Part shown: positions 1,583 to 58,612 of the stretch, piece after piece | How positions within the stretch are numbered: the stretch's first letter is position 1 | How the letters are laid out: every line of letters begins with the position of its first letter | Assembly: GCF_020745735.1 (NCBI RefSeq) | Contig: NW_026867509.1 | Location: forward strand, 496,001-560,000 | Source: Hemiscyllium ocellatum | Lineage: Eukaryota | Length of the DNA stretch: 64,000 nt | Direction: 5' to 3' | The notes under the pieces: generated by a model | Seen by the model: the letters and a program-made list of their open reading frames with translations, nothing else | What the model was told of the DNA's origin: nothing | Database searches by the model: none | Translations under genes and position numbers: made by a program

Positions 1583-1621
1583 AGTTTTTGCACGAAATTC
1601 CACCTGTTTCCTGTCACCGTG
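1583..1621 (-). other. 23-RSS of TRAV-like pseudogene
   Basis: Minus strand: heptamer cacggtg (1621-1615), 23-nt spacer, nonamer gcaaaaact (1591-1583). Confidence 0.9.
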
Positions 1622-2143
1622 TCTCTCAGCCCGCAGTAATATACTACACTGTCTGACAGCCGCAGTCCACTGATAGTGAAATTCCCCTCGTGTTTCGAAA
1701 TAGCCAGAAATGCAGAAAATCTATCGCCAACACTGTGTGATTTGAAAACATTTTCATGTGATGACTTGCAGCTAAATGATGTAAGGGATTCTCCACCGTC
1801 CTGATGGTACAGACGGCACAATTTTGAGAAATAGAAGGCAGCCGAAATCAAATAACCGAAGTAAACTGTTACTGAGTCTCCTTCAATCTCAGTTACTGTA
1901 ATTGGTTTAAGTGAGACCTAATGCGCACGACGAACCGCTGCAGAAATTTAGATTTGGAAATATATATATATATTAGCGTTATATTCTGCAATCAATGCAA
2001 AGGCATTTATGGCAAATGGAGGGAGAGTACAATTGAAGAGCAAGTTGTTCGTGTCATCGACAATTGAGAATTGTTAGAGTGGAGAACTAACCTGTTAAGA
2101 GAGCTGAAGCAGTGAGGAATGACTTAGTAATAATACCTGACAT
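1622..2143 (-). pseudogene. TCR alpha-type V pseudogene (leader 2143-2092, V exon 1937-1622)
   Basis: Leader MSGIITKSFLTASALLT followed by GTTAGT, and a tttctgcag acceptor. V exon ends EGNFTISGLRLSDSVVYYCGLRD + RSS. It has an in-frame TAG near the exon start, the first Cys replaced by Phe, and the WYRQ motif reading LYHQ. Confidence 0.88.
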
Positions 2144-6420: not shown

Positions 6421-8053
6421 ATACGAAGTTCAGAGAAAGCTAGACAGGGAAAATATTGGAGAGAATCAGGCAATTGGTTGGAGGGCCTGGAGATGACCAT
6501 ATGTTAAAATGGACGCCCCACGCAGTAAAATTGAAACCACAGCTGAACCGGCACAAAATAAAATCAACAGACAATACTAAGAATTTAGAACGACCTCTCA
6601 GGATGGTGCAAACGACTAGCAGAAGAAATTAGTTGTTAAAATGAAATGAAATTGACTGTGAAAATTCAAAATAATTTCAAATCGATAAAGTCGAGCCTCT
6701 TTTTAGCCGATAATACACAAAAGAAATAACAGGTAGAGCATTTCCTAAAATGCTGATCTATTAATATCATTGATCTCTGACAGTCGGTGTTCAATTTAAA
6801 TGAGAGTTCACTTTTGGTTCTTTCTTTTTGTGAATGGTGATGGAAACCAGCTTGGTCTCAGATTTTTTTTGCAAGTTACGTGTCGCTTATGTCCGAATTT
6901 TGATTTGAGTTCACGTTTCTTCAGAAAAAAATGCAAAAGTAAGAGTAACATCAGAAAATCAGCACAGAGGAATGTTATTTGATATGCATGCCAACCCCCA
7001 CACCATGAAGCTGGAATCTAATTCGTCCTGAAATTCTTGCTTTCTCACAGTAGTCCAACACATATTTACTGATGCAATAAACATTCAATTTGAGTGCATG
7101 CATCTTATGGACTAGACCAGACCACTTAAAACATTTTAAAGCAGGCAGCCTATACCATAACTTTGGAATTTGTTTCGGTAAATGTACAGTGAAAATTACC
7201 CAGATTAAGTTAGCTAGGTTGACTAAAAAAATTTAATACAGAAAAAAATGTGTTCACAAAATTGGACAATGAAACACAAAGCACAGAATAACGAAATCGT
7301 ACGGAATTCAGTCTATCCAAAATAGATGTAATTATGCTGTTCCAAACATGCACAAACGTCTCAATAATTAAAATACATTGAAGTACTAATATATATGGAG
7401 CACATGCTTGCAGGTTGACGTTTAAGGGCAGAAAGAGAGAAAGAGATTTCCACCTAGTTCATTTCAAACCCTCACCAGTTCAAGACTGAATTAAACTGCT
7501 CAGCTAGGGAGCTGACCCCACTAACCTTTCATTATACCAGCCATTTCTAAACCAGGACTATTTTGGACTGAAGATTCATCTGTTTACATATAAACAAAAG
7601 GCCCCTCAAAATGTTTTTCATCTCTGTACCAAACCAGACTGATCTGAGCCCGGCCTGGTTTATTCCCCACCCCCCCCCCCCCCCGCCCCCCGAAAAACAA
7701 ATCAAGGATCGAGTATCCTTTAGCAAAGGAGCAGCTTTTCGGAAAAAAGCTCGCTTTGTGACACGGGTTATTGACAAAACTGTTCATGCTATTCACCTCT
7801 TGTGTGAAATGTAACAAACCATGTCCGTTATTTATTGACTTTCTGTAAACAGTTTGTAAAGATGGAACAAGCTTTGTCAGATGCTGGTTGACTCAAAGCT
7901 AGATTTCTTCCAATTAATAGGGTGCTTCCTCTATGAACAGTGCATTACTGAACAATATGTATTTAATACAGCAGATTCTGGTTACAAACAATCCTGCACA
8001 GCCCCATCCCAAACCCCTGGTTCAGAGTCCAGCTCCTCAGATCTCTACCAATA

Positions 8054-8249
8054 TGATTTTGCATTGCTCGCTCTGTGCACCATGATACTGTGTCTGTAAT
8101 CCCACCATTATTCAGTTTTTGTACTCGTCTCTGCGTGCTTTGTGTCACCGTGTCTATAAACTCTACCATTATAAGCCATTTTTAAGCTTTCTCCGTGCTC
8201 TATATATTTGTGTCTGTAATCACACCATGTTCTGGTATTTGACAGCTCT
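8054..8249 (-). repeat. Tandem 60-bp 23-RSS array, distal part
   Basis: Heptamers start at 8086, 8146, 8206 and nonamers at 8054, 8114, ~8174, 8234 (exact 60-bp period). Best unit: cacggtg-23-acaaaaact (8152-8114). Confidence 0.85.
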
Positions 8250-9568
8250 GTTGAAAATGTGTTGCTGGTTAAAGCACAGCAGGTTAGGCAGCATCCAACG
8301 AATAGGAAATTCGACTTTTCGGGCATAAGCCCTTCATCAGGAATGAGGAGAGTGTGCCAAGCAGGCTAAGATAAAAGGCAGGGAGGAGGGACTTGGGGGA
8401 GGGGCGATGGAGATGTGATAGGTGGAAGGAGGTCAAGGTGAGGGTGATAGGCCGGAGTGGGGTGGGGGCGGAGAGGTCTGGAAGAAGATTGCAGGTTAGG
8501 AGGGCGGTGCTGAGTTGAGGGAACCGACTGAGACAAGGTGGGGGGAGGGGAAATGAGGAAACTGGAGAAATCTGAGTTCATCCCTTGTGGTTGGAGGATT
8601 CCCAGGCGGAAGATGAGGCGCTCCTCCTCCAGCCGTCGTGTTGTTATGTTCTGCCGATGGAGGAGTCCAAGGACCTGCATGTCCTCGGTGGAGTGGGAGG
8701 GAGAGTTAAAGTGTTGAGCCACGGGGTGGTTGGGTTGGTTGGTCCGGGCGTCCCTGAGGTGTTCTCTGAAGTGTTCCGCAAGTAAGCGGCTCGTCTCCCC
8801 AATATAGAGGAGGCCACATCGGGTGCAGCGGATGCAATAGATGATGTGTGTGGAGGTACAGGTGAACTTGTGGTGGATATGGAAGGATCCCTTGGGGCCT
8901 TGGAGGGAAGTGAGGGAGGAGGTGTGGCCGCAAGTTTTACATTTCCTGCAGTTGCAGGGGAAGGTGCCGGAAGTGGAGGTTGGGTTGGTGGGGGGTGTGG
9001 ACCTGACGAGGGAGTCACGAAGGGAGTGGTCTTTGCGGAACGCTGATAGGGGAGGGGAGGGAAATATATCCCTGGTGGTGGGGTCCGTTTGGAGGTGGCG
9101 GAAATGACGGTGGATGATACGTTGTATACGGAGGTTGGTGGGGTGGTTGGTGATAACCAGTGGGGTTCTGTCTTGGTGGCGGTTGGAGGAGCGGGGCTCA
9201 AGTGCGGAGGAGCGGGAAGTGGAGGAGATGCGGTGGAGGGCATCGTCGATCCCGTTTGGGGAGAATCTGCAGTCCTTGAAGAAGGAGGCCATCTGGGCTT
9301 TGCGGTGTTTGACCTGGTCCTCCTGGGAGCAGATGCGGCCGAGACGAAGAAATTGGGAATATGGGATGAAGTTTTTACAGGGGGCAGGGTGGGAGGAGGT
9401 GTACTCCAGATAGCTGTGGGAGTCAGTCGGTTTATAGTAGACGTCTGTGTTGAGTCGGTCACCTGCAATAGAAATGGAAAGGTCGAGGAAGGGGAGGGAG
9501 GAGTCTGAGACAGTCCAGGTGAATTTGAGGTCGGGATGGAAGGTGTTAGTAAAGTTGATGAACTATTC
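8250..9568 (-). mobile_element. Neptune-type PLE, 5'-truncated (RT C-terminus, Cys-rich linker, GIY-YIG)
   Basis: ORF 9292-8366 contains CNCRKCKTC and IIYCIRCTRCGLLYIGET. The in-frame upstream sequence reads FHPDLKFTW...LPFLD. Confidence 0.92.
8310..8343 (-). ncRNA. Minimal hammerhead ribozyme motif (mutated)
   Basis: ttc-CTGATGA-a-gggc-ttat-gccc-GAAA-aGTC-gaa. An A replaces the usual C after GAAA, breaking the ACGT palindrome. Confidence 0.65.
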
Positions 9569-9667
9569 ATCAGTTTGAGAGCTCTATCCGTACTCAGTGA
9601 CACTGAGTCTATCATTCCCAGCATGTTTCGGTTGTGTGCAACTGTCTCCTAAAGCTGTATCATTGTA
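9569..9667 (-). repeat. Tandem 60-bp 23-RSS array, proximal part (V RSS + second RSS)
   Basis: tacaatg-23-acacaaccg (9667-9629), 21 nt, then ctcagtg (9607-9601) with a 22-23-nt spacer and tcaaa. Heptamers are 60 bp apart. Confidence 0.7.
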
Positions 9668-9972
9668 TGTGAGATGAGTGCGGATTCAATGCGCAGTTAT
9701 ACGCAGTGGAGTCATTAGGCTGTATTTGCGAGACCAGTAACGAACTGATGTCCGACACAGGATCAATAGAAACAGAAATTCGCCCGCCACTAGCATTTTA
9801 TTTATTGTGCTCTCCGGACGTGTACCTTTGAACTGGATATTTCAGCGCTTGTCATGGGTACTGACAGAACCAGTAAACTATGTCCTGAGGGAGCCCTGAA
9901 TATTCACAGCATAAAGAAATGGTGTCACCTGAGAGTTGTAGGGGTGGATTCTGGACGTCACGTAACTGGAAT
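9668..9972 (-). pseudogene. TCR delta V pseudogene, supporting-V-like family
   Basis: cccacag acceptor; GDTISLCCEYSGLPQDIVYWFCQYP*QALKYPVQRYTSGEHNK*NASGGRISVSIDPVSDISSLLVSQIQPNDSTAYNCALN. Two stops and a 5' frameshift; no leader seen upstream. Confidence 0.85.
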
Positions 9973-10344
9973 CTGTGGGATGACATTCAAGATCATTACT
10001 TATTCAACCTGTGTTACAGTGAAATTGAAAATTATCATAATGATGTTGTACTGTTCGTTGACATTTCAGTGGGCACCATTCTGTTTAGCCGAAACATAAA
10101 CTAATGAGGCGATGAATTTCCATTTGATTTTACATATGTTCTTCTTATTATGTGCAATTCATTGCCAAAATTGACGGTGGAAGTTGATCCAACAGTAACT
10201 TTCAATAGGCAATCGACAACAGCTGATTCTGGCAGAAAATCAATGGCTATGGGATTAGGCAAGTACAGGAGGAACCATTTCAAAGAACTCTGAAGGAGAC
10301 AGTATCCACAAAAGGAGCAGAATGCTATCGTCAGCGATTTTGTG

Positions 10345-29958: not shown

Positions 29959-32866
29959 ACCAATACGTTTGTTCTTTGAATTAACTGGCATAGTGGTATA
30001 TTAAGAGATGGACAGCTGTGATATAATAAAATTAGAGCAGACATTAAATTGGAATGTCCTGCATGATTCTACTTCTCATATTCACACTTTACAACTATGA
30101 CCTCTCTCTCTCTGGCTGAAAAAAAACAGAAATGCAGACTGATCTGGAAAGAGAAAGCAGACTGGTGTATTATCAAACGTGTAACAACTCTTTCACTTTG
30201 AAAAGGATATTCTGTTCTGGGCATTTGTTTAAAGAGAAGTTGAAAAGGCATCCGTTAAGTACTGCAGACTGAAGATCCCCTACGTAAACAAGTTAGGTGG
30301 CCTTTAGTTTTTGTTTTATGAAAGTTGGAAGAATGGAATCAGTTTGAAAGTGAGTGGCCAGTTCTCACAAAACAGGCTTTCTATTTTTTTTTCAGCTTGA
30401 GAGGCAAAAGCTGTTCGTGATTCCAGAAGAGTTGGACTCGTTAGTGAATGATAACAAGCCACTCCTTCCTCTGAAATCTCCATTGATGTTATTTCCTCTT
30501 TATTGGAGAACAACAGGCAAGAATCTGTGTTTGAACTGATTTTGTTTTTTGCCAAGCGATTTGTTTCTAATAGAATATAATAGATCAGAACAGAATATAA
30601 TAGAATAGCATATTCTTTATTGTAAAGTTAATCCATTGAAAGAGTACCGAGAAAAGGCTTCAAGCTGTCTGCCTTCTTTTGGCGACATCTTACGTGCAAG
30701 TATCTGGGTACAAACGTTGCATACACCAGAGGACTAAATGTAGTTGAATTACTTTGCACAGTTTAAAACTACGTTTTTTAAAAGAAACTACTAAAATGTT
30801 GACATTAAAAATTGACATTCCGTATACACATTACATTGTTGCAGCTCAACACAGTATGTCCACACTGATCCTAATCCAAAAGCCTTCCCTGCTCTGCTCC
30901 AAGCCGGCAGCCCACTCGGTACCGGTACTCAGCTGCTCCAAGGTAAGTTTGAGTGCTGCATTCCCCATCCTGGTTTCAGTCCAGAACTCTCTGCTTACTC
31001 GCGGCTTGAAGCCTGCTTCCCTGGACTGCTCTGGAACTTACAGCTCATGGGCTGCTCCAGGACTCGCAGCCGGTGCACTCCTCTAGCGATTCTGGGTTCT
31101 AACAGCTGATGTAATGTTTCAGGGCTTGCAACACACGTGCAGTGTCAGAGCTCATTGCTCTAGTACTTGCTGCCTATGCCTGTCGCTGATCCACGATTCA
31201 CTTTTGGGGCTAAGGGAGAACAAAAAACGAAGAGAAAAAGACAAAGGAAGAAAAAGAATAGGCGTGGTCGAAGAGTCCGAGCAAGGCATCTTATTCTAAC
31301 ACTGTCTTGCCCGAGAGATATTATGAGATTTACTGTACGTGAACAATTCATTAGGAACAGGTACTTTATATATTATTCGGTTATGGTTTCTACTCGTTAA
31401 GTTATTCTAAGTTATTCTTTCTTTTGTTTGTATATTAACTACACTGTAAGTACATTGTGCTTTGTTTAACGTCATGTGGTTTGACCCGTCACATCAGACC
31501 TGGAAAAATCAGTTCGCATCTATCTTTAAAATGAGAAAATGTTAGGGTCCAGGCTCTCTTCTTAAAATATTTCCCAGTCCATAAGAACTGGAACATAGGG
31601 AACGAGGAGCTGGCATTGCAAAAAAATATTATGCATATATTCAAAGAGGCTGATGTGGAAAATCCTTATTTGCTCTATAGATGAACAAAAAAGAATTATA
31701 AATGCATCAGTTCAATAACAGAAGAGTTAGAGAAAAAATGCTTATGTTACCGATTCGCACCAGAATACAGACCTCATTGACAAATAGGGTGCATGGATCC
31801 TGTGGAAGTGATGTCAGGAAAAGGTAAATTACAGGTGGGACAAAGGAATAGAAGAGCACGGCGTCTTAGTGGAAATTTTTTGTTATGATTAGAAGGGTGA
31901 ACATTTCAGATGAAATAGGAATTCTGGCATTCTCCAGTTGATGGTCGCTTAGTCCCTCCCCTGTCCTGAACATTGTACATAATGTAAAACTCAGAGGTTA
32001 GGGGCAGAACCAAGCAATTTATTTGTCAAGAATTTAAATTTTCAGGGACGGAGCAGACGCACTTCCTAGGAATAACATTAAAATCACAACAGAACCTGCA
32101 CAAACTGAAACCAACTGACAGTTTTGAGTCTACCAGGAATGAGGTCACAACGATGTAAAAGCACAAACAAACCATGTAGAAATAAAATACGATGAGATAA
32201 AATCACCTTCTAAGTTCAAATTAAGGCGAAGCAGAAAAATCTACTCCCTTGAAAGTGGAATAGACTTTCCATGACGATTAAAGTGACAAATAGAAGTGTT
32301 AATTTTTGAAGATGGCAACTCAGCTCAATTGAATTTGTCGTTTTCACTTGATTTTCCTCTGAGCAGTAAGAAACACAATTTATGCTTTTGCATAAAATAT
32401 TGTTAGAAAGTATTGTCTTATTGATGTTTATTTTTCAATAAGAAAATATTCAAATGTAAATTTAGATCATGCATTTGTCATTCTCCCTACTCTCCAAAGC
32501 TGTAAAACAATTTGTCCCACGACTCTTCCTACTTCTCCAGAACTTCACAAATTTGACAAGCTCCTGTCTTTGTCTAGTTAAATTCTGTGATTGTTCATTG
32601 CATCTGCTTTCTCCATCCTCTTCCTGTGTTGAAGGGAACAAATGAACATCCTCAGGGACTAATTTTCCATAACAGCCTTCAAAAATGCAGAAAGTAGTAT
32701 TTGATGTTAATTATCAGAAAATCACAAACTTATTCATTTAATTATTATCTTTCCATTATGTACAATGTATTAGCAAATAATGAAAACCGTTTCTTTGCTC
32801 CAGTCCCGGTTCACAAATTTCCAATATCCTGCAACTGCAAACCACTACTCTCTCCATTGTTTGTAT

Positions 32867-33003
32867 TGCTGTGGTTATAATCCTCAACACATTCAAGTCT
32901 TTGCACAGCTTTCGAAGTGCTCTATCACTATGTCCTCACCATCAGTATCAGCATGTTTTTTTTTACAGCTCTCTCCGTGCTCTGGATGACAGAGTATGCT
33001 GTG
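32867..33003 (-). repeat. Decayed tandem RSS array 3' of supporting-type Vdelta
   Basis: catagtg-21-gcaaagact (32932-32896) and cacagca (32873-32867), 59 bp apart. Spacer agagcacggagagagctgt and linker gaatgtgttgaggattataac resemble the 8-9.7-kb array. Confidence 0.6.
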
Positions 33004-33265
33004 CAGTTGTACTGTGGAGATACGTAAACGACTGATTATCACTGCAGAGTCAGTATCAGCAGAAATTCTTCCTCTAGCTGTGTTTTCTGTATTCTGCTCT
33101 TCTGAAGTGTATCTTTGAAGCAAGTATTTCAGAGACTGTCCTGGGCGTGATCGTTTCAGTAAACTGTGTACTGACAAAACCCTGAAAATTTATGGCTTAA
33201 TATCACGGTGGCAGCTGCAGCAGAGGTTTGGAAAGTAGGACTCTGGGACAACAGAGACGGAGAAT
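33004..33265 (-). pseudogene. Supporting TCR delta V (NAR-TCR type) pseudogene
   Basis: ttccacag acceptor; DSPSLLSQSPTFQTSAAAATVILSHKFSGFCQYTVY*, frameshift, RSRPGQSLKYLLQRYTSEEQNTENTARGRISADTDSAVIISRLRISTVQL. CDR1 Cys TGT at 33176-33174; no leader seen. Confidence 0.82.
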
Positions 33266-34299
33266 CTGTGGAATTTTTTAAAAATGTTTTTAACGCATTG
33301 ACTGCCTCAGAAACCTAGTAATTGTGAAAATCATTCTGTTAGTAAGACATTTCTCTTAATTTAACGTAGTCGTGAAGTGTCTTTAACATAATTATCAAAT
33401 TAATGTCCATACTTTGCGTTTCCTGTGTTGACACAGTGAATTATTACGATCCAATTCAATCGCTAGAAGAGTTCAAAATCAAGACTAAATTTCAAACTGT
33501 AATTGCAAGTTTTCTACCACAGGGAATTGTCCCAGAAAAGCGAGCGAGTGTTACCGAATGTGAAAAATGGTTGCTTTTTTGAAGCTTCCGCCATTGCAGT
33601 ACAGACAGTTTGATAATTAGCTGTGCTTTCTGCTTCCATCGCCTTTGATAAAATAATCTTCATGTGTATTTCTGGAAAAATGTGCATTTGGGAAATCGTT
33701 TTATTCATTCACTCTCCTCCTTGCTAAGTCGATCGCCTTGCAGAATTGGGTAAAAGAAAACACCCCTGTGTGTGTTGCATCACTGTCTTAGTAAAGTCCA
33801 ATGGAAAGTCATAAATGTCATCAGTAGTGATTCTTCTAGATGCCCGCTGAGGCACAGTATGAGGGAATAGAATCAAAGAAAAGTGAGGGCACAGTGGCAG
33901 TTCATTCGCTCTGGCGTGCACATATTGTCTCTCTGAGAGAGGAATTCAGCTGCTACCATTTCAAACTCTCTACCAAGCAGCCTGGTGCATTCTTCATTCT
34001 TTCATAATTGTGCAATTTGCTTTATAACATCTGAATCAATTTTGTCTGTCCTGCAGTCTCAGGAAATACATGCCAGATCATAACTGTTTATCTTGCTGTT
34101 CCTTTATTTTTGAAGCCGCAAATGCTTCTTTTGTCAATTCACTTAAAGGGTTTATTTTCCATTGCCGAGTTTTCTACCAACGGGATCAGTTTCACTTTAT
34201 CTTATCTATCCAAGCTCTTCATGATTTTGCTTATCTTCACCAAGTAGGAAAAATGTGAATGCGTCGCAGGGACTCAAAATAAAATTTACCAGGATGTCC

Positions 34300-37905: not shown

Positions 37906-38335
37906 TACCAAACTTTATAATAATAGGCGGCAGTATCTTTAACATTCACCTTCTGAGCATTCAGCAAAATGTCTTTTCAGCTTTACCCGTCCTCACAACA
38001 AACCGTCCTCCTGATAAGATTCAGTCCCGCTCTGTCCCAGTCCATGCTTGTCTGAAGAAATCTCCCCGCTGCAATGAATATGCAAAGAAATCACCATAGA
38101 AAACACAGTCGATGATGAGAGACTGGCACTTTGCTTTGTTGTCCGCTGGTAGGGTCTGTACCACTGAATGACTGACAGTTATTGGTCTGCACAGTGGAAC
38201 TGAACAAGAAACATCGCCTGTTTTATTTTTTCATGGATTCGGGGAGCTCTGTACTAAATGTGCACAATGTTAGATTTTTGGATCCATAATCCCGGGTAAA
38301 TAGTCACACAGTGTAAGGACAAGAATAAGTCCCAT
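37906..38335 (-). pseudogene. NAR-TCR V pseudogene (putative leader 38335-38293, V exon 38199-37906)
   Basis: VVQTLPADNKAKCQSLIIDCVFYGDFFAYSLQRGDFFRQAWTGTERD*ILSGGRFVVRTGKAEKTF, frameshift, LNAQKVNVKDTAAYYYKV. NAR-type GGRF, short CDR2-less length and an extra FR1 Cys (KCQS). Leader MGLILVLTLCDYLP has a GG instead of GT donor. Confidence 0.82.
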
Positions 38336-43916: not shown

Positions 43917-44099
43917 TCGAGATTAGAGTGGAGCTGGAAAAGGACAGCATGTCAGAGAGTGTCCGAGGAGCCAGATAACGACGTTTCGGACAAAAGCCCT
44001 TCATCTGGAATGAAGGGCAATTTGCCTGAAACGTCGAGTATTCGGCTCCTCAGATGCTGACTACCCTGTTGTCCTTTTCCAGCACCACTCTAATCTTGA
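43917..44099. mobile_element. Mini PLE-derived fold-back with two head-to-head hammerhead halves
   Basis: Arms 43917-44003 and 44011-44099 are inverted, with a 7-nt loop tctggaa. Confidence 0.75.
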
Positions 44100-49352: not shown

Positions 49353-50184
49353 GGCTTTCTACCTTGTCCGCTGCAGCCCTGCAATAATGTGGGCTCCACA
49401 GCACAGTAATGCACAGCGTTGTCAGAAATTAGAATAGTTAAGTCGGTGATCTTCTCAGCTATTTCAAGCGTAGAATAAAATCCAGCAGTGATGATGTTAT
49501 CCCTGCGCACATCACTCCCAATAAGCCAAAGCATGTGCTGTGGCCGCTGCCCAGGACGTTTACTGTACCAGTTCACAAACATTGGGTGGCATGGTGGCAC
49601 AGTGGTTAGCACTGCTGCCTCACAGCGCCAGGGACCTGGGTTCAATTCATGCCTCAGGCGACTGACTGTGTGGAGTTTGCACGTTCTCCCTGTGTCTGCG
49701 TAGGTTTCCTCCGGGTCTTCCGGTTTCCTCCCACAGACCGAAGATGTGCGGGTCAGGTGAATTGGCCATGCTAAATTGCCCGTAGTATTAGGTAAGAGGG
49801 GTATGGGTGGGTTGCGCTTCGGCGGGTCGGTGTGGACTTGTTGGGCCAAAGGGCCTGTTTCGACACTGTAAGTAATCTAATCTAATCTAAAAAAAAAGTG
49901 AGAGATGCTGGTCTTCACGATGAAGATTAGTTTCGTATTCTTTGCATATTCAAACGTCTTTTCAGCAAAGGGCTGTCCCACTGTATCCTGCTGTCTCTAT
50001 TCTAACATATAAAATGTAATAAATTAAAATTGGTGTGAGCCTGATATTGATCAACATACTCGTCATAACGACATCAACCAACAACTAACATTTATATTGT
50101 AGCCATCATTCCTTTTCTTAGAAGAAAATACGTACTCAGAAAGTTTAAAATGATGAGAAACTGTGTGAGACATTTCTCCAAGAT
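49353..50184 (-). pseudogene. TCR alpha-type V pseudogene split by an HE1 SINE
   Basis: Leader-like (ATC)LEKCLTQFLIILNFL followed by GTACGT (50184-50136); DTVGQPFAEKTFEYAKNTKLIFIVKTSISH, SINE, MFVNWYSKRPGQRPQHML...DNAVHYCAVEP. RSS cacatta-23-tagaaagcc at 49391-49353. Confidence 0.8.
49584..49897 (+). mobile_element. HE1-type SINE, young
   Basis: tRNA-like head, TAATC repeats and A tail. Confidence 0.93.
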
Positions 50185-58096: not shown

Positions 58097-58612
58097 ATGG
58101 TAGTATTTTATATTCATTATTTGCAACTGCAGCGCTCATAACTGGTAAAACATCCTAAAGCTACACACTCTTCGCGTACAGACATTACTCACGTCGTTTC
58201 AAATGCACTTTCTCTACGTTTAAAAAGTGTGCAGTCACAGATGGTAACACGTACCATAGCAATGATAACATATTGAAGTCTTATGTTTCTAAATTTCTGC
58301 AGGTGTTGATGGTGCAGACTCAATCTCGCAGGAGGTAGTCTCAGCAATGAAATTTGAAGGCAATGCATTGAATTTTATTTAAGCGTATTTGGCCACTGCA
58401 ACTAATGAGCATTCTTTGGATTTATATCGTCAGGATCGATACAGAGCACTGTCATTCTCGATCCACATCACTACCTATGGCGATGTTATCAAAGCTGAAG
58501 GTGTAGAGCTTCGATTTTTGACTAATATTGACAGTGGGAAAAGTGTGGGACGTTTCACCGTCCGTGATATGCGGTTGTCTGACAGCACAATGCAATACTG
58601 CGCACTGAGAGA
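58097..58612 (+). pseudogene. TCR alpha-type V pseudogene
   Basis: Leader 58097-58144 has a 1-nt deletion, then GTAAAA. Exon 58303-58612: VDGADSISQE...FI*AY...LYRQ...FTVRDMRLSDSTMQYCALRD. RSS is decayed. Same family as 1622-2143 and 55876-56607. Confidence 0.85.

What the first reader, a model, noticed from the sequence alone, without database searches (positions are those of the whole stretch)
8054..9972. A TCR delta-type V followed by a 60-bp-period tandem array of 23-RSS signals
Seen in sequence: behind the V exon (9972-9668, minus) RSS-like units repeat every 60 bp. Heptamers start at 9661 and 9601, then after a PLE insertion at 8206, 8146 and 8086; nonamers start at 8234, ~8174, 8114 and 8054. 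That is five units, or six if the halves on each side of the PLE are distinct rather than a target duplication. The unit at 8152-8114 is near-canonical (cacggtg-23-acaaaaact). Each 21-nt linker ends in AGA and is G-rich and D-like: aaacatgctgggaatgataga, agaacatggtgtgattacaga, tataatggtagagtttataga, gaataatggtgggattacaga. Established: a V normally carries one 3' 23-RSS, and TCR delta D segments carry a 5' 12-RSS plus a 3' 23-RSS; no 5' 12-RSS is visible here. Inference: because 60 is a multiple of 3, RAG cutting at a distal RSS would add 20-aa germline blocks to CDR3 in frame, or the array could simply raise recombination frequency. I know of no description of this layout, but cannot search the literature.
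Basis: partly seen in the sequence, partly recalled or inferred. Interest (0 to 1): 0.9.

Follow-up and report, generated by a model that had tools for sequence, protein, structure and literature searches.

The report
Tandem recombination signals behind shark V
Behind a dead shark T-cell-receptor V gene lies a decayed copy of a five-unit tandem array of RAG recombination signals; intact copies of this array follow the same special V gene in three other sharks and a sawfish, a layout I found described nowhere.

Summary
All heptamer, nonamer and linker coordinates are correct. A profile built only from other species' units finds every unit here and nothing else in the 64 kb.

The V is a leaderless NAR-TCR "supporting" V-delta pseudogene with two stop codons. 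The array has five units, not six: the two halves beside the Penelope-like insert share a 12-bp target duplication. With the insert removed, the array aligns unit for unit with a five-unit array in Hemiscyllium.

Intact supporting V-deltas carry 2-5 units with a 60-63-bp period and near-canonical CACAGTG-23-ACAAAAACC:
- Heterodontus: 3 units
- Hemiscyllium: 5 units
- Rhincodon: at least 3 units
- Pristis: 2 units

Across species only the V exon and the array align; the flanks mostly do not. In distal units the heptamers and nonamers are better kept than the linkers.

The in-frame 20-aa idea is refuted, because the period is usually 61 bp and stops appear within about two units. The D-like idea is unsupported.

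Most likely (about 0.45) the array provides redundant RAG entry sites. The main rival is a neutral hitchhiking repeat. The window's two copies are relics. First readers of this scan noted the same layout at about ten other places in this genome.

The parts
9669..9971 (-). Supporting-type V-delta exon (V-A). It is a pseudogene, leaderless, and preceded by a splice acceptor.
   Evidence: The translation has two in-frame stops. One stop-free piece gives a weak Pfam V-set match (E 0.001, below the Pfam gathering cut-off). It is 49% identical to the supporting V of Hemiscyllium P0007. The acceptor and exon align with L003. The CDR1 cysteine is lost.
9608..9667 (-). Unit 1: heptamer TACAATG (9661-9667), 23-nt spacer, nonamer ACACAACCG (9629-9637), 21-nt linker.
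   Evidence: 11 of 16 consensus positions, no CAC. nhmmer E 1.6e-4.
9574..9607 (-). Unit 2, left half: heptamer CTCAGTG (9601-9607) and spacer, ending in the left target-site-duplication copy (9574-9585).
   Evidence: (model positions 3-28).
8250..9573 (-). 5'-truncated Penelope-like retroelement inserted into unit 2.
   Evidence: Stop-free ORF of 398 aa at 8369-9562 with a weak GIY-YIG match (E 0.0027, below the Pfam cut-off). It is flanked by a 12-bp duplication. Rfam finds no hammerhead.
8213..8249 (-). Unit 2, right half: right duplication copy (8238-8249), nonamer TCAAATACC (8234-8242), linker.
   Evidence: nhmmer model positions 23-61, E 6.6e-4. Colinear alignment after removing the insert.
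8153..8212 (-). Unit 3: CACAAAT-23-AAAATGGCT plus linker.
   Evidence: E 8e-3.
8093..8152 (-). Unit 4: CACGGTG-23-ACAAAAACT plus linker. This is the best 23-RSS in the window.
   Evidence: 14 of 16 positions, rank 1 of 127,086. nhmmer E 3.5e-7.
8042..8092 (-). Unit 5: CACAGTA-23-GCAAAATCA (nonamer 8054-8062) plus a linker remnant. This is the end of the array.
   Evidence: It aligns with the last unit and the downstream flank of L003.
7900..8041 (-). Post-array flank, homologous to the flank behind the Hemiscyllium array.
   Evidence: 73% identity over 154 aligned bases.
32835..32994 (-). Second, homologous array (B). Three decayed units have heptamers starting at 32994, 32932 and 32873; the rest is deleted into the flank.
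   Evidence: nhmmer E 7e-6 and 4e-4.
33004..33270 (-). Paralogous supporting V-delta pseudogene (V-B). It has stops, frameshifts and an FR3 deletion but keeps the CDR1 cysteine.
37952..38173 (-). NAR-type V pseudogene upstream of V-B. It identifies the cassette as NAR-TCR.
   Evidence: tblastn with the NAR V of P0007 and P0012 (E 8e-15).
1583..1940 (-). Control: a conventional, leader-bearing V with one 23-RSS (CACGGTG-23-GCAAAAACT, 1583-1621) and no array.
   Evidence: no unit match there.

Best explanation
What it is (confidence about 0.9). The feature is a decayed, retroelement-split copy of a five-unit tandem array of 23-bp-spacer recombination signal sequences. Each unit of about 60 bp holds a heptamer, a 23-nt spacer, a nonamer and a linker of about 21 nt. 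This array is a conserved appendage of the leaderless "supporting" V-delta exon of NAR-TCR cassettes in elasmobranchs. Both copies in this window sit behind pseudogenes and are relics.

How it works (inferred, confidence about 0.45). In working cassettes the extra units are kept as real RAG targets. Several adjacent 23-RSSs give RAG, coming from the D-delta/J-delta recombination centre, several chances to capture this one V. The supporting V has no promoter of its own and is the only V that can pair in cis with a rearranged NAR V. Only a cut at the V-proximal unit can give a productive joint. A cut at a distal unit would leave nested RSSs that could be cut again.
For: Shown:
- The array is present and in register in the window.
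- A homologous second array lies behind the paralogous V, downstream of a NAR V pseudogene.
- Stop-free supporting V exons carry arrays: Heterodontus francisci 3 units, Hemiscyllium ocellatum 5, Rhincodon typus at least 3, Pristis pectinata 2. Most units are near-canonical.
- In the three cassettes mapped (Hemiscyllium, Rhincodon, Pristis), the NAR V, the NAR D 3' side and the NAR J each gave a single RSS hit; the D's 5' RSS did not reach the scan threshold. Only the supporting V carries an array. Conventional Vs in the window have one RSS or none.
- Across species the V exon (z 60-166) and the array (z 15-83) align. Distal units alone give z 18-68 among sharks. The 300-bp flanks give z about 0, except the upstream intron between L003 and L004 (z 70) and, more weakly, L001 and L004 (z 13).
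- The five units align colinearly between the window and Hemiscyllium, so the array is old and positionally stable.
- In distal units of other species, identity to the consensus is heptamer 0.92, nonamer 0.88, spacer 0.83, linker 0.76. Heptamer plus nonamer against linker gives Fisher p = 4.5e-4.
- Between Hemiscyllium and Rhincodon, distal heptamer plus nonamer is 0.84 identical, spacer plus linker 0.65, and intron 0.61.
- The pseudogene copies here have decayed: nonamer 0.49, linker 0.50.

From the literature: RAG tracks from the Trdd2 recombination centre in mouse Tcrd, and retained RSS fusions are re-used (PMC4995090).
Against: - No direct evidence that RAG cuts distal units.
- The four rearranged chains I could read all join at the V end. 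That is expected for productive chains and is uninformative about non-productive ones.
- Distal units are not uniformly kept. Hemiscyllium units 4-5 and Pristis unit 2 are degenerate although the V is intact.
- The pairwise tests restricted to distal units are only marginal (p = 0.06 and 0.28).
- Units are not independent samples because they share ancestry.
- A cut at a distal unit is wasteful, because the retained units carry stops.
- Copy number varies from 2 to 5, as in any tandem repeat.
Confidence: 0.45

Rival explanations
1. Neutral hitchhiker. The array is a minisatellite that arose by tandem duplication of the V's RSS plus about 21 bp of flank. It is carried along when NAR-TCR cassettes duplicate. 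Fresh duplications, unequal crossing-over or gene conversion from the one working, V-proximal RSS keep it RSS-like. Distal units do nothing.
For: - Copy number varies (2, 3, 5) and units are deleted or degenerate even behind intact Vs.
- Within Heterodontus and L001 the units are 85-92% alike, as after recent duplication or conversion.
- Between Hemiscyllium and Rhincodon the spacers and linkers evolve at about the intron rate (0.65-0.69 against 0.61).
- The window copies show that the array can decay freely.
Against: - Unit-specific variants are shared across species. Examples are the first-unit nonamer CCAAAAACC in L001 and Heterodontus, and the AGCTGG spacer variant of unit 2 in Hemiscyllium and Rhincodon. 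The five units are colinear between the window and Hemiscyllium. So homogenisation has been rare.
- Even so, distal heptamers and nonamers stay near consensus and are better kept than the linkers (p = 4.5e-4).
- 35 of 36 positions of the CAC triplet are intact in the 12 distal units scored.
- Distal units align between shark orders whose flanks do not align.
Confidence: 0.35
2. A conserved element that works without RAG. One possibility is a repeated protein-binding or chromatin element in the conserved spacer. Another is the splice-donor-like GGTGAGG/GGTGGGG in the linker, acting on germline transcripts of the unrearranged cassette.
For: - The 23-nt spacer is well kept: 0.83-0.85 identity to consensus, and 19 of 23 positions between the shark consensus and Pristis.
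- The linker keeps a GGTG(A/G)GG core.
- Mustelus gene models splice the unrearranged V directly to the C exon.
Against: - The best-kept positions are exactly the heptamer and nonamer, and the spacing is 23 throughout.
- No binding site or splice use was tested.
Confidence: 0.08
3. One reading: a RAG cut at a distal unit adds germline 20-aa blocks to CDR3 in frame.
For: The period in this window is exactly 60 bp.
Against: - The period is 61 bp in L001, Hemiscyllium, Rhincodon and Pristis and 63 bp in Heterodontus.
- The V frame stops at the first heptamer here.
- In the other loci the V frame stops 5, 5, 71, 115 and 127 nt after the first heptamer base.
- The apparent read-through protein P0006 is a gene call that read TGA as sense.
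- No rearranged chain retains a unit.
Confidence: 0.02
4. The linkers are D-delta-like segments with one-sided signals.
For: The linkers are G-rich (core GGTGGGGATTAC) and each is followed by a 23-RSS, as D-delta segments are.
Against: - No 5' 12-RSS. Only the previous unit's nonamer, in the wrong orientation, abuts the linker.
- A one-sided element cannot be inserted between V and J.
- The linker is the least conserved part of the unit.
- CDR3s of P0011, P0031, P0033 and P0034 hold no linker translation.
Confidence: 0.03

Closest known systems
Canonical single 23-RSS at the 3' end of TCR alpha/delta V segments
   Same: Heptamer CACAGTG, 23-nt spacer and nonamer ACAAAAACC directly abut the V coding end. 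The first unit of each intact array is exactly this.
   Different: Here the signal plus about 21 bp is repeated head to tail 2-5 times. Conventional Vs in the same window have one signal or none.
NAR-TCR, the doubly rearranging TCR-delta of cartilaginous fish. Its associated TcR-delta V lacks a leader and has a CDR1 cysteine (Criscitiello 2006, as summarised in PMC1845163 and PMC12227049).
   Same: The arrays sit behind exactly this V type: leaderless, with a splice acceptor, about 3 kb downstream of a NAR V-D-J mini-cluster.
   Different: The papers I could read say nothing about the supporting V's signals. The primary 2006 paper is not in the held library.
Cryptic or embedded RSSs used for secondary rearrangement, and re-use of retained RSS fusions in mouse Tcrd (PMC4995090). 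VH replacement heptamers and the kappa deleting element are examples from my own knowledge.
   Same: Extra RAG targets near a V allow further rounds of cutting.
   Different: Those are single, mostly weak sites inside coding or intronic DNA. They are not a conserved tandem array of full consensus signals.
Minisatellite (tandem repeat of tens of bp)
   Same: Head-to-tail units of 60-63 bp with variable copy number.
   Different: The unit is a complete RSS. The array is tied to one V family across shark orders and a batoid, and aligns between species whose flanks do not.

Membership tests
23-bp-spacer RSS (RAG target) | Heptamer beginning CAC | tested here: inconclusive
   In the window, units 3, 4 and 5 have CAC; units 1 (TAC) and 2 (CTC) do not. 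In other species 16 of 17 units have it.
23-bp-spacer RSS (RAG target) | Spacer of 23 +/- 1 nt followed by an A-rich nonamer | tested here: met
   The spacer is 23 nt in all window units. Nonamer matches are 8 of 9 (unit 4), 6 of 9 (units 1 and 5) and poor in units 2 and 3. In other species nonamers match 7-9 of 9 in 13 of the 16 units with a readable 23 +/- 1 spacer; Hemiscyllium unit 5 has a spacer deletion.
23-bp-spacer RSS (RAG target) | Cleaved by RAG and joined under the 12/23 rule | not testable with these tools
   This needs junction sequencing or a recombination assay.
NAR-TCR-associated (supporting) TCR-delta V | No leader exon; the V exon opens with a splice acceptor | tested here: met
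   The acceptor ...cccacag|att at 9972 aligns with the acceptor used in the Hemiscyllium gene model. The feature is as defined in PMC1845163.
NAR-TCR-associated (supporting) TCR-delta V | Conserved cysteine in CDR1 | tested here: not met
   V-A reads SGLPQDIVYW where intact members read SGFCQYTVHW. V-B keeps the cysteine. The loss fits a pseudogene.
NAR-TCR-associated (supporting) TCR-delta V | Lies downstream of a NAR-type V-D-J mini-cluster | tested here: inconclusive
   Met for V-B (NAR V pseudogene at 38173-37952). No NAR V was found upstream of V-A, where retroelement insertions lie.
NAR-TCR-associated (supporting) TCR-delta V | Sequence membership of the clade | tested here: met
   A profile of V-A and V-B pieces gave 13 top hits. 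Twelve are two-V NAR-TCR gene models or chains and one (P0006) is a short contig holding only the supporting V (E 5e-25 to 1e-10).
TCR-delta D segment | 5' 12-RSS and 3' 23-RSS around a short coding core | tested here: not met
   No 12-RSS lies 5' of any linker.
TCR-delta D segment | Core appears in CDR3 of rearranged chains | tested here: not met
   Absent from four chains. The sample is small.
Penelope-like retroelement (the insert) | Reverse transcriptase plus GIY-YIG endonuclease ORF | tested here: inconclusive
   A stop-free 398-aa ORF. The GIY-YIG match is E 0.0027, below the Pfam cut-off. The RT part is truncated.
Penelope-like retroelement (the insert) | Target-site duplication | tested here: met
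   A 12-bp duplication with one mismatch at 9585-9574 and 8249-8238.
Neutral minisatellite | No constraint beyond that of neighbouring non-coding DNA | tested here: inconclusive
   Distal units align across shark orders while the flanks do not, and heptamers and nonamers are better kept than linkers. But the pairwise distal-only tests are marginal.

The most novel reading that the evidence does not exclude
The array is a selected "RSS ladder" that dates at least to the common ancestor of sharks and rays. Any of up to five signals can make the rate-limiting long-range capture of the supporting V-delta by RAG. A joint made at a distal unit brings the nested proximal signals into the recombination centre. 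There they are cut again against a remaining downstream 12-RSS until the V-proximal signal gives a usable joint. This would be a built-in retry device for the only V that can partner a rearranged NAR V on the same chromosome. It would also be the first conserved tandem-RSS regulator of V usage.
Probability: 0.2. Interest if true: 0.85.

Novelty: new variant of a known kind. Interest (0 to 1): 0.72.

Why it matters
V(D)J gene segments are understood to carry one signal per joining side. A tandem array of full consensus 23-RSSs that is tied to a single V family, and kept from horn shark to sawfish, is an unexpected layout.

It offers a natural experiment on three questions: how RSS number and strength set V usage, how RAG chooses among adjacent signals, and how the two rearrangements of the doubly rearranging NAR-TCR chain are coordinated.

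It also has a practical side. Public gene models of NAR-TCR cassettes run into the array and translate it as protein (P0007, P0010, P0012, P0013).

Tried and rejected
- TRF at minimum score 30 finds no array because the units are too diverged. The repeat finder and a cross-species profile do find it.
- A narrow V-motif regex missed the Vs. tblastn found them.
- blastn of the insert against the window gave no second copy, so the insert boundaries rest on the duplication and the colinear alignment.
- Rfam found no hammerhead in 7900-10100.
- Seven literature searches and four papers read turned up no description of tandem RSSs. Criscitiello 2006 and Ott 2021 are not held.
- Seven of twelve contig look-ups returned no DNA (Chiloscyllium, Scyliorhinus twice, Heterodontus second copy, Cetorhinus, Carcharodon, Mustelus). 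Lamniform and carcharhiniform arrays are therefore unverified.
- P0006 looked like a five-unit read-through protein. Its contig shows in-frame TGA codons read as sense, so I rejected it as evidence for coding.
- The nearest-neighbour table of units was ambiguous about positional orthology. The colinear alignment settled it for the window against Hemiscyllium.
- A short CACTGT..ACACAGG motif upstream of both window Vs is absent from the other loci, so I dropped it.
Full report
**1. The observation**

On the minus strand the V exon (9971-9669) is followed by RSS-like units in a strict 60-bp register. Heptamers start at 9667 and 9607, and after a 1.3-kb insert at 8212, 8152 and 8092. The repeat finder reports a three-copy family spaced 60 and 60 bp. 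TRF reports nothing, because the units are only about 50% identical to one another.

I scored every position of the window for a CACAGTG-23-ACAAAAACC match. Unit 4 (14 of 16) is the single best of 127,086 positions, and unit 5 scores 12 of 16. Units 1 and 2 have lost the CAC.

The strongest check is independent of this window. An nhmmer profile built only from units of other genomes finds each unit here, with E from 3.5e-7 to 0.9. It also finds two units of a second array near 32,900. Nothing else in the 64 kb reaches E<0.1.

**2. What the V is**

The exon has two in-frame stops, so it is a pseudogene. It has a splice acceptor and no leader.

A profile of stop-free pieces of this V and its paralogue at 33,270-33,004 was searched against 1.84 billion representative proteins. 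It returned 13 top hits (E 5e-25 to 1e-10). Twelve are two-V-domain proteins: a NAR-type V followed by a V-delta of this family, in some cases followed by a TCR-type C region and transmembrane segment. The thirteenth (P0006) is a short contig holding only the supporting V.

This is the NAR-TCR chain. Its associated TcR-delta V is defined by lacking a leader and having a CDR1 cysteine (PMC1845163; PMC12227049). The paralogue V-B keeps that cysteine and lies about 4.7 kb downstream of a NAR V pseudogene at 38,173-37,952. V-A has lost the cysteine, and no NAR V is detectable upstream of it.

**3. Five units, not six**

The profile places the sequence left of the insert at model positions 3-28 and the sequence right of it at positions 23-61. 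The overlap is a 12-bp duplication with one mismatch, at 9585-9574 and 8249-8238.

With the insert and one duplication copy removed, the array aligns colinearly with the array behind an intact supporting V in Hemiscyllium ocellatum: five units to five units. The V exon and the downstream flank align as well.

The insert carries a stop-free 398-aa ORF with a weak GIY-YIG match, consistent with a 5'-truncated Penelope-like element.

**4. The array is not confined to pseudogenes**

I recovered DNA around five of the hits.

| Locus | Species or source | V exon | Units | Period | Note |
|---|---|---|---|---|---|
| L002 | Heterodontus francisci | stop-free | 3 | 63 bp | |
| L003 | Hemiscyllium ocellatum | stop-free | 5 | 60-61 bp | last two units degenerate |
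| L004 | Rhincodon typus | stop-free | at least 3 | 61 bp | then a transposon |
| L005 | Pristis pectinata (a batoid) | stop-free | 2 | 61 bp | second unit degenerate |
| L001 | 1-kb ENA contig, unnamed | one TGA | 5 | 61 bp | near-perfect units |

Species names come, and the taxonomy. Most units read CACAGTG, a 23-nt spacer and ACAAAAACC, or differ from that by one or two bases. L001:656-716:+ is a typical unit.

In the three cassettes mapped, the NAR V, the 3' side of the NAR D and the NAR J each gave a single signal; the D's 5' signal did not reach the scan threshold. Conventional Vs in the window have one signal or none. The array therefore belongs to the supporting V-delta specifically.

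**5. Is it kept by selection?**

*Evidence for.*
- Between species, local alignment of the V exon gives z 60-166 and of the array z 15-83.
- Units 2 onward, taken alone, give z 18-68 among sharks.
- The 300 bp on either side give z about 0. The exceptions are the upstream intron between the two orectolobiforms (z 70) and, more weakly, between L001 and Rhincodon (z 13).
- In distal units, identity to the consensus falls in the order expected for working signals: heptamer 0.92, nonamer 0.88, spacer 0.83, linker 0.76. Heptamer plus nonamer against linker gives p = 4.5e-4.
- Unit-specific variants shared between species, and the five-to-five colinearity, argue that homogenisation from unit 1 has been rare.
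- The window's pseudogene copies show what relaxed evolution does: nonamer 0.49, linker 0.50.

*Evidence against.*
- Some distal units behind intact Vs are degenerate.
- Pairwise tests restricted to distal units are marginal (p = 0.06 and 0.28). Between Hemiscyllium and Rhincodon the spacers and linkers evolve at about the intron rate.
- Units share ancestry, so the tests overstate independence.

I read this as moderate, not decisive, evidence for constraint on distal heptamers and nonamers.

**6.

*In-frame 20-aa blocks.* This is refuted. The period is 61 or 63 bp elsewhere. The V frame stops at the first heptamer here and 5 to 127 nt after the first heptamer base in the other loci. The one apparent read-through protein is a gene call that read TGA as sense.

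*D-like linkers.* This is unsupported. There is no 5' 12-RSS. The linker is the least conserved part of the unit. Four rearranged chains join at the V end with no linker-derived residues.

*Raising recombination frequency.* This is untested but is the reading I favour. The reasoning is inference. The supporting V has no promoter of its own. It is the only partner in cis for a rearranged NAR V. RAG is known to track from the D-delta recombination centre and to re-use retained signals in mouse Tcrd (PMC4995090).

**7. Novelty**

Seven full-text searches and four relevant papers turned up no description of tandem signals behind any V. The primary NAR-TCR paper is not held, so a prior mention cannot be excluded.

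First readers of this scan noted the same layout at about ten other places in this genome. I could verify only the one inside this window.

**Verdict**

This is a real, conserved and apparently undescribed variant of RSS architecture. The copy in this window is a relic. The function is open, with redundant RAG entry sites at about 0.45 and neutral hitchhiking at about 0.35.

Noticed in passing
window 1625-2143 (-): A conventional V with a leader exon (about 2090-2143) and a single 23-RSS. Its FR1 and FR2 lack the canonical Cys23 and Trp41 (VTVYFGY, LYHQ).
   Followed up: partly
window 49376-49576 (-): A V fragment truncated at its 5' side by a SINE-like insertion. Its 3' signal is degenerate (ACATTAT) and there is no array.
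   Followed up: partly
window 58300-58610 (+): A third V pseudogene of a different family, with one stop. It ends YCALRD with no recognisable heptamer and no array.
   Followed up: partly
window 9567-9573 and about 8318-8346 (-): The insert begins with CTGATGA and ends with a CTGATGA...GAAA stretch that looks like a hammerhead core. Rfam reports no hammerhead at E<=0.1. A 35-bp piece of the 3' end recurs at 43979-44013.
   Followed up: partly
L001 (ENA ERZ27276711 contig k141_5642): A contig of a metagenome assembly is shark or ray host DNA. Its gene call (P0006) translates TGA as an amino acid and so turns a five-unit RSS array into protein.
   Followed up: yes
P0007, P0010, P0012, P0013 (NCBI gene models): Public NAR-TCR gene models carry unrelated names (kappa light chain-like, immunoglobulin superfamily member 2-like). 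They extend their last exon into the RSS array until the first stop.
   Followed up: partly
P0014, P0018, P0020, P0023, P0025 (Callorhinchus milii named for P0020 only): Proteins of this holocephalan-type family that carry a supporting-type V share a read-through tail. HHSD and YSTVSD lie 23 residues apart, which could encode two CACAGTG heptamers about 70 nt apart. I could not check this at the DNA level, and only P0020's species name was looked up.
   Followed up: no
P0004, P0038 (Mustelus asterias gene models): The supporting V is spliced straight to the C region after CAL, from a donor inside the V's 3' end. This may reflect sterile transcripts of the unrearranged cassette.
   Followed up: no
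linker of the unit, e.g. L001:695-716:+: The linker core GGTGAGG/GGTGGGG resembles a 5' splice site. Its significance is unknown.
   Followed up: no
window 32835-32873 (-): In array B the third unit runs directly into sequence homologous to the post-array flank of array A. A deletion therefore removed the remaining units.
   Followed up: partly
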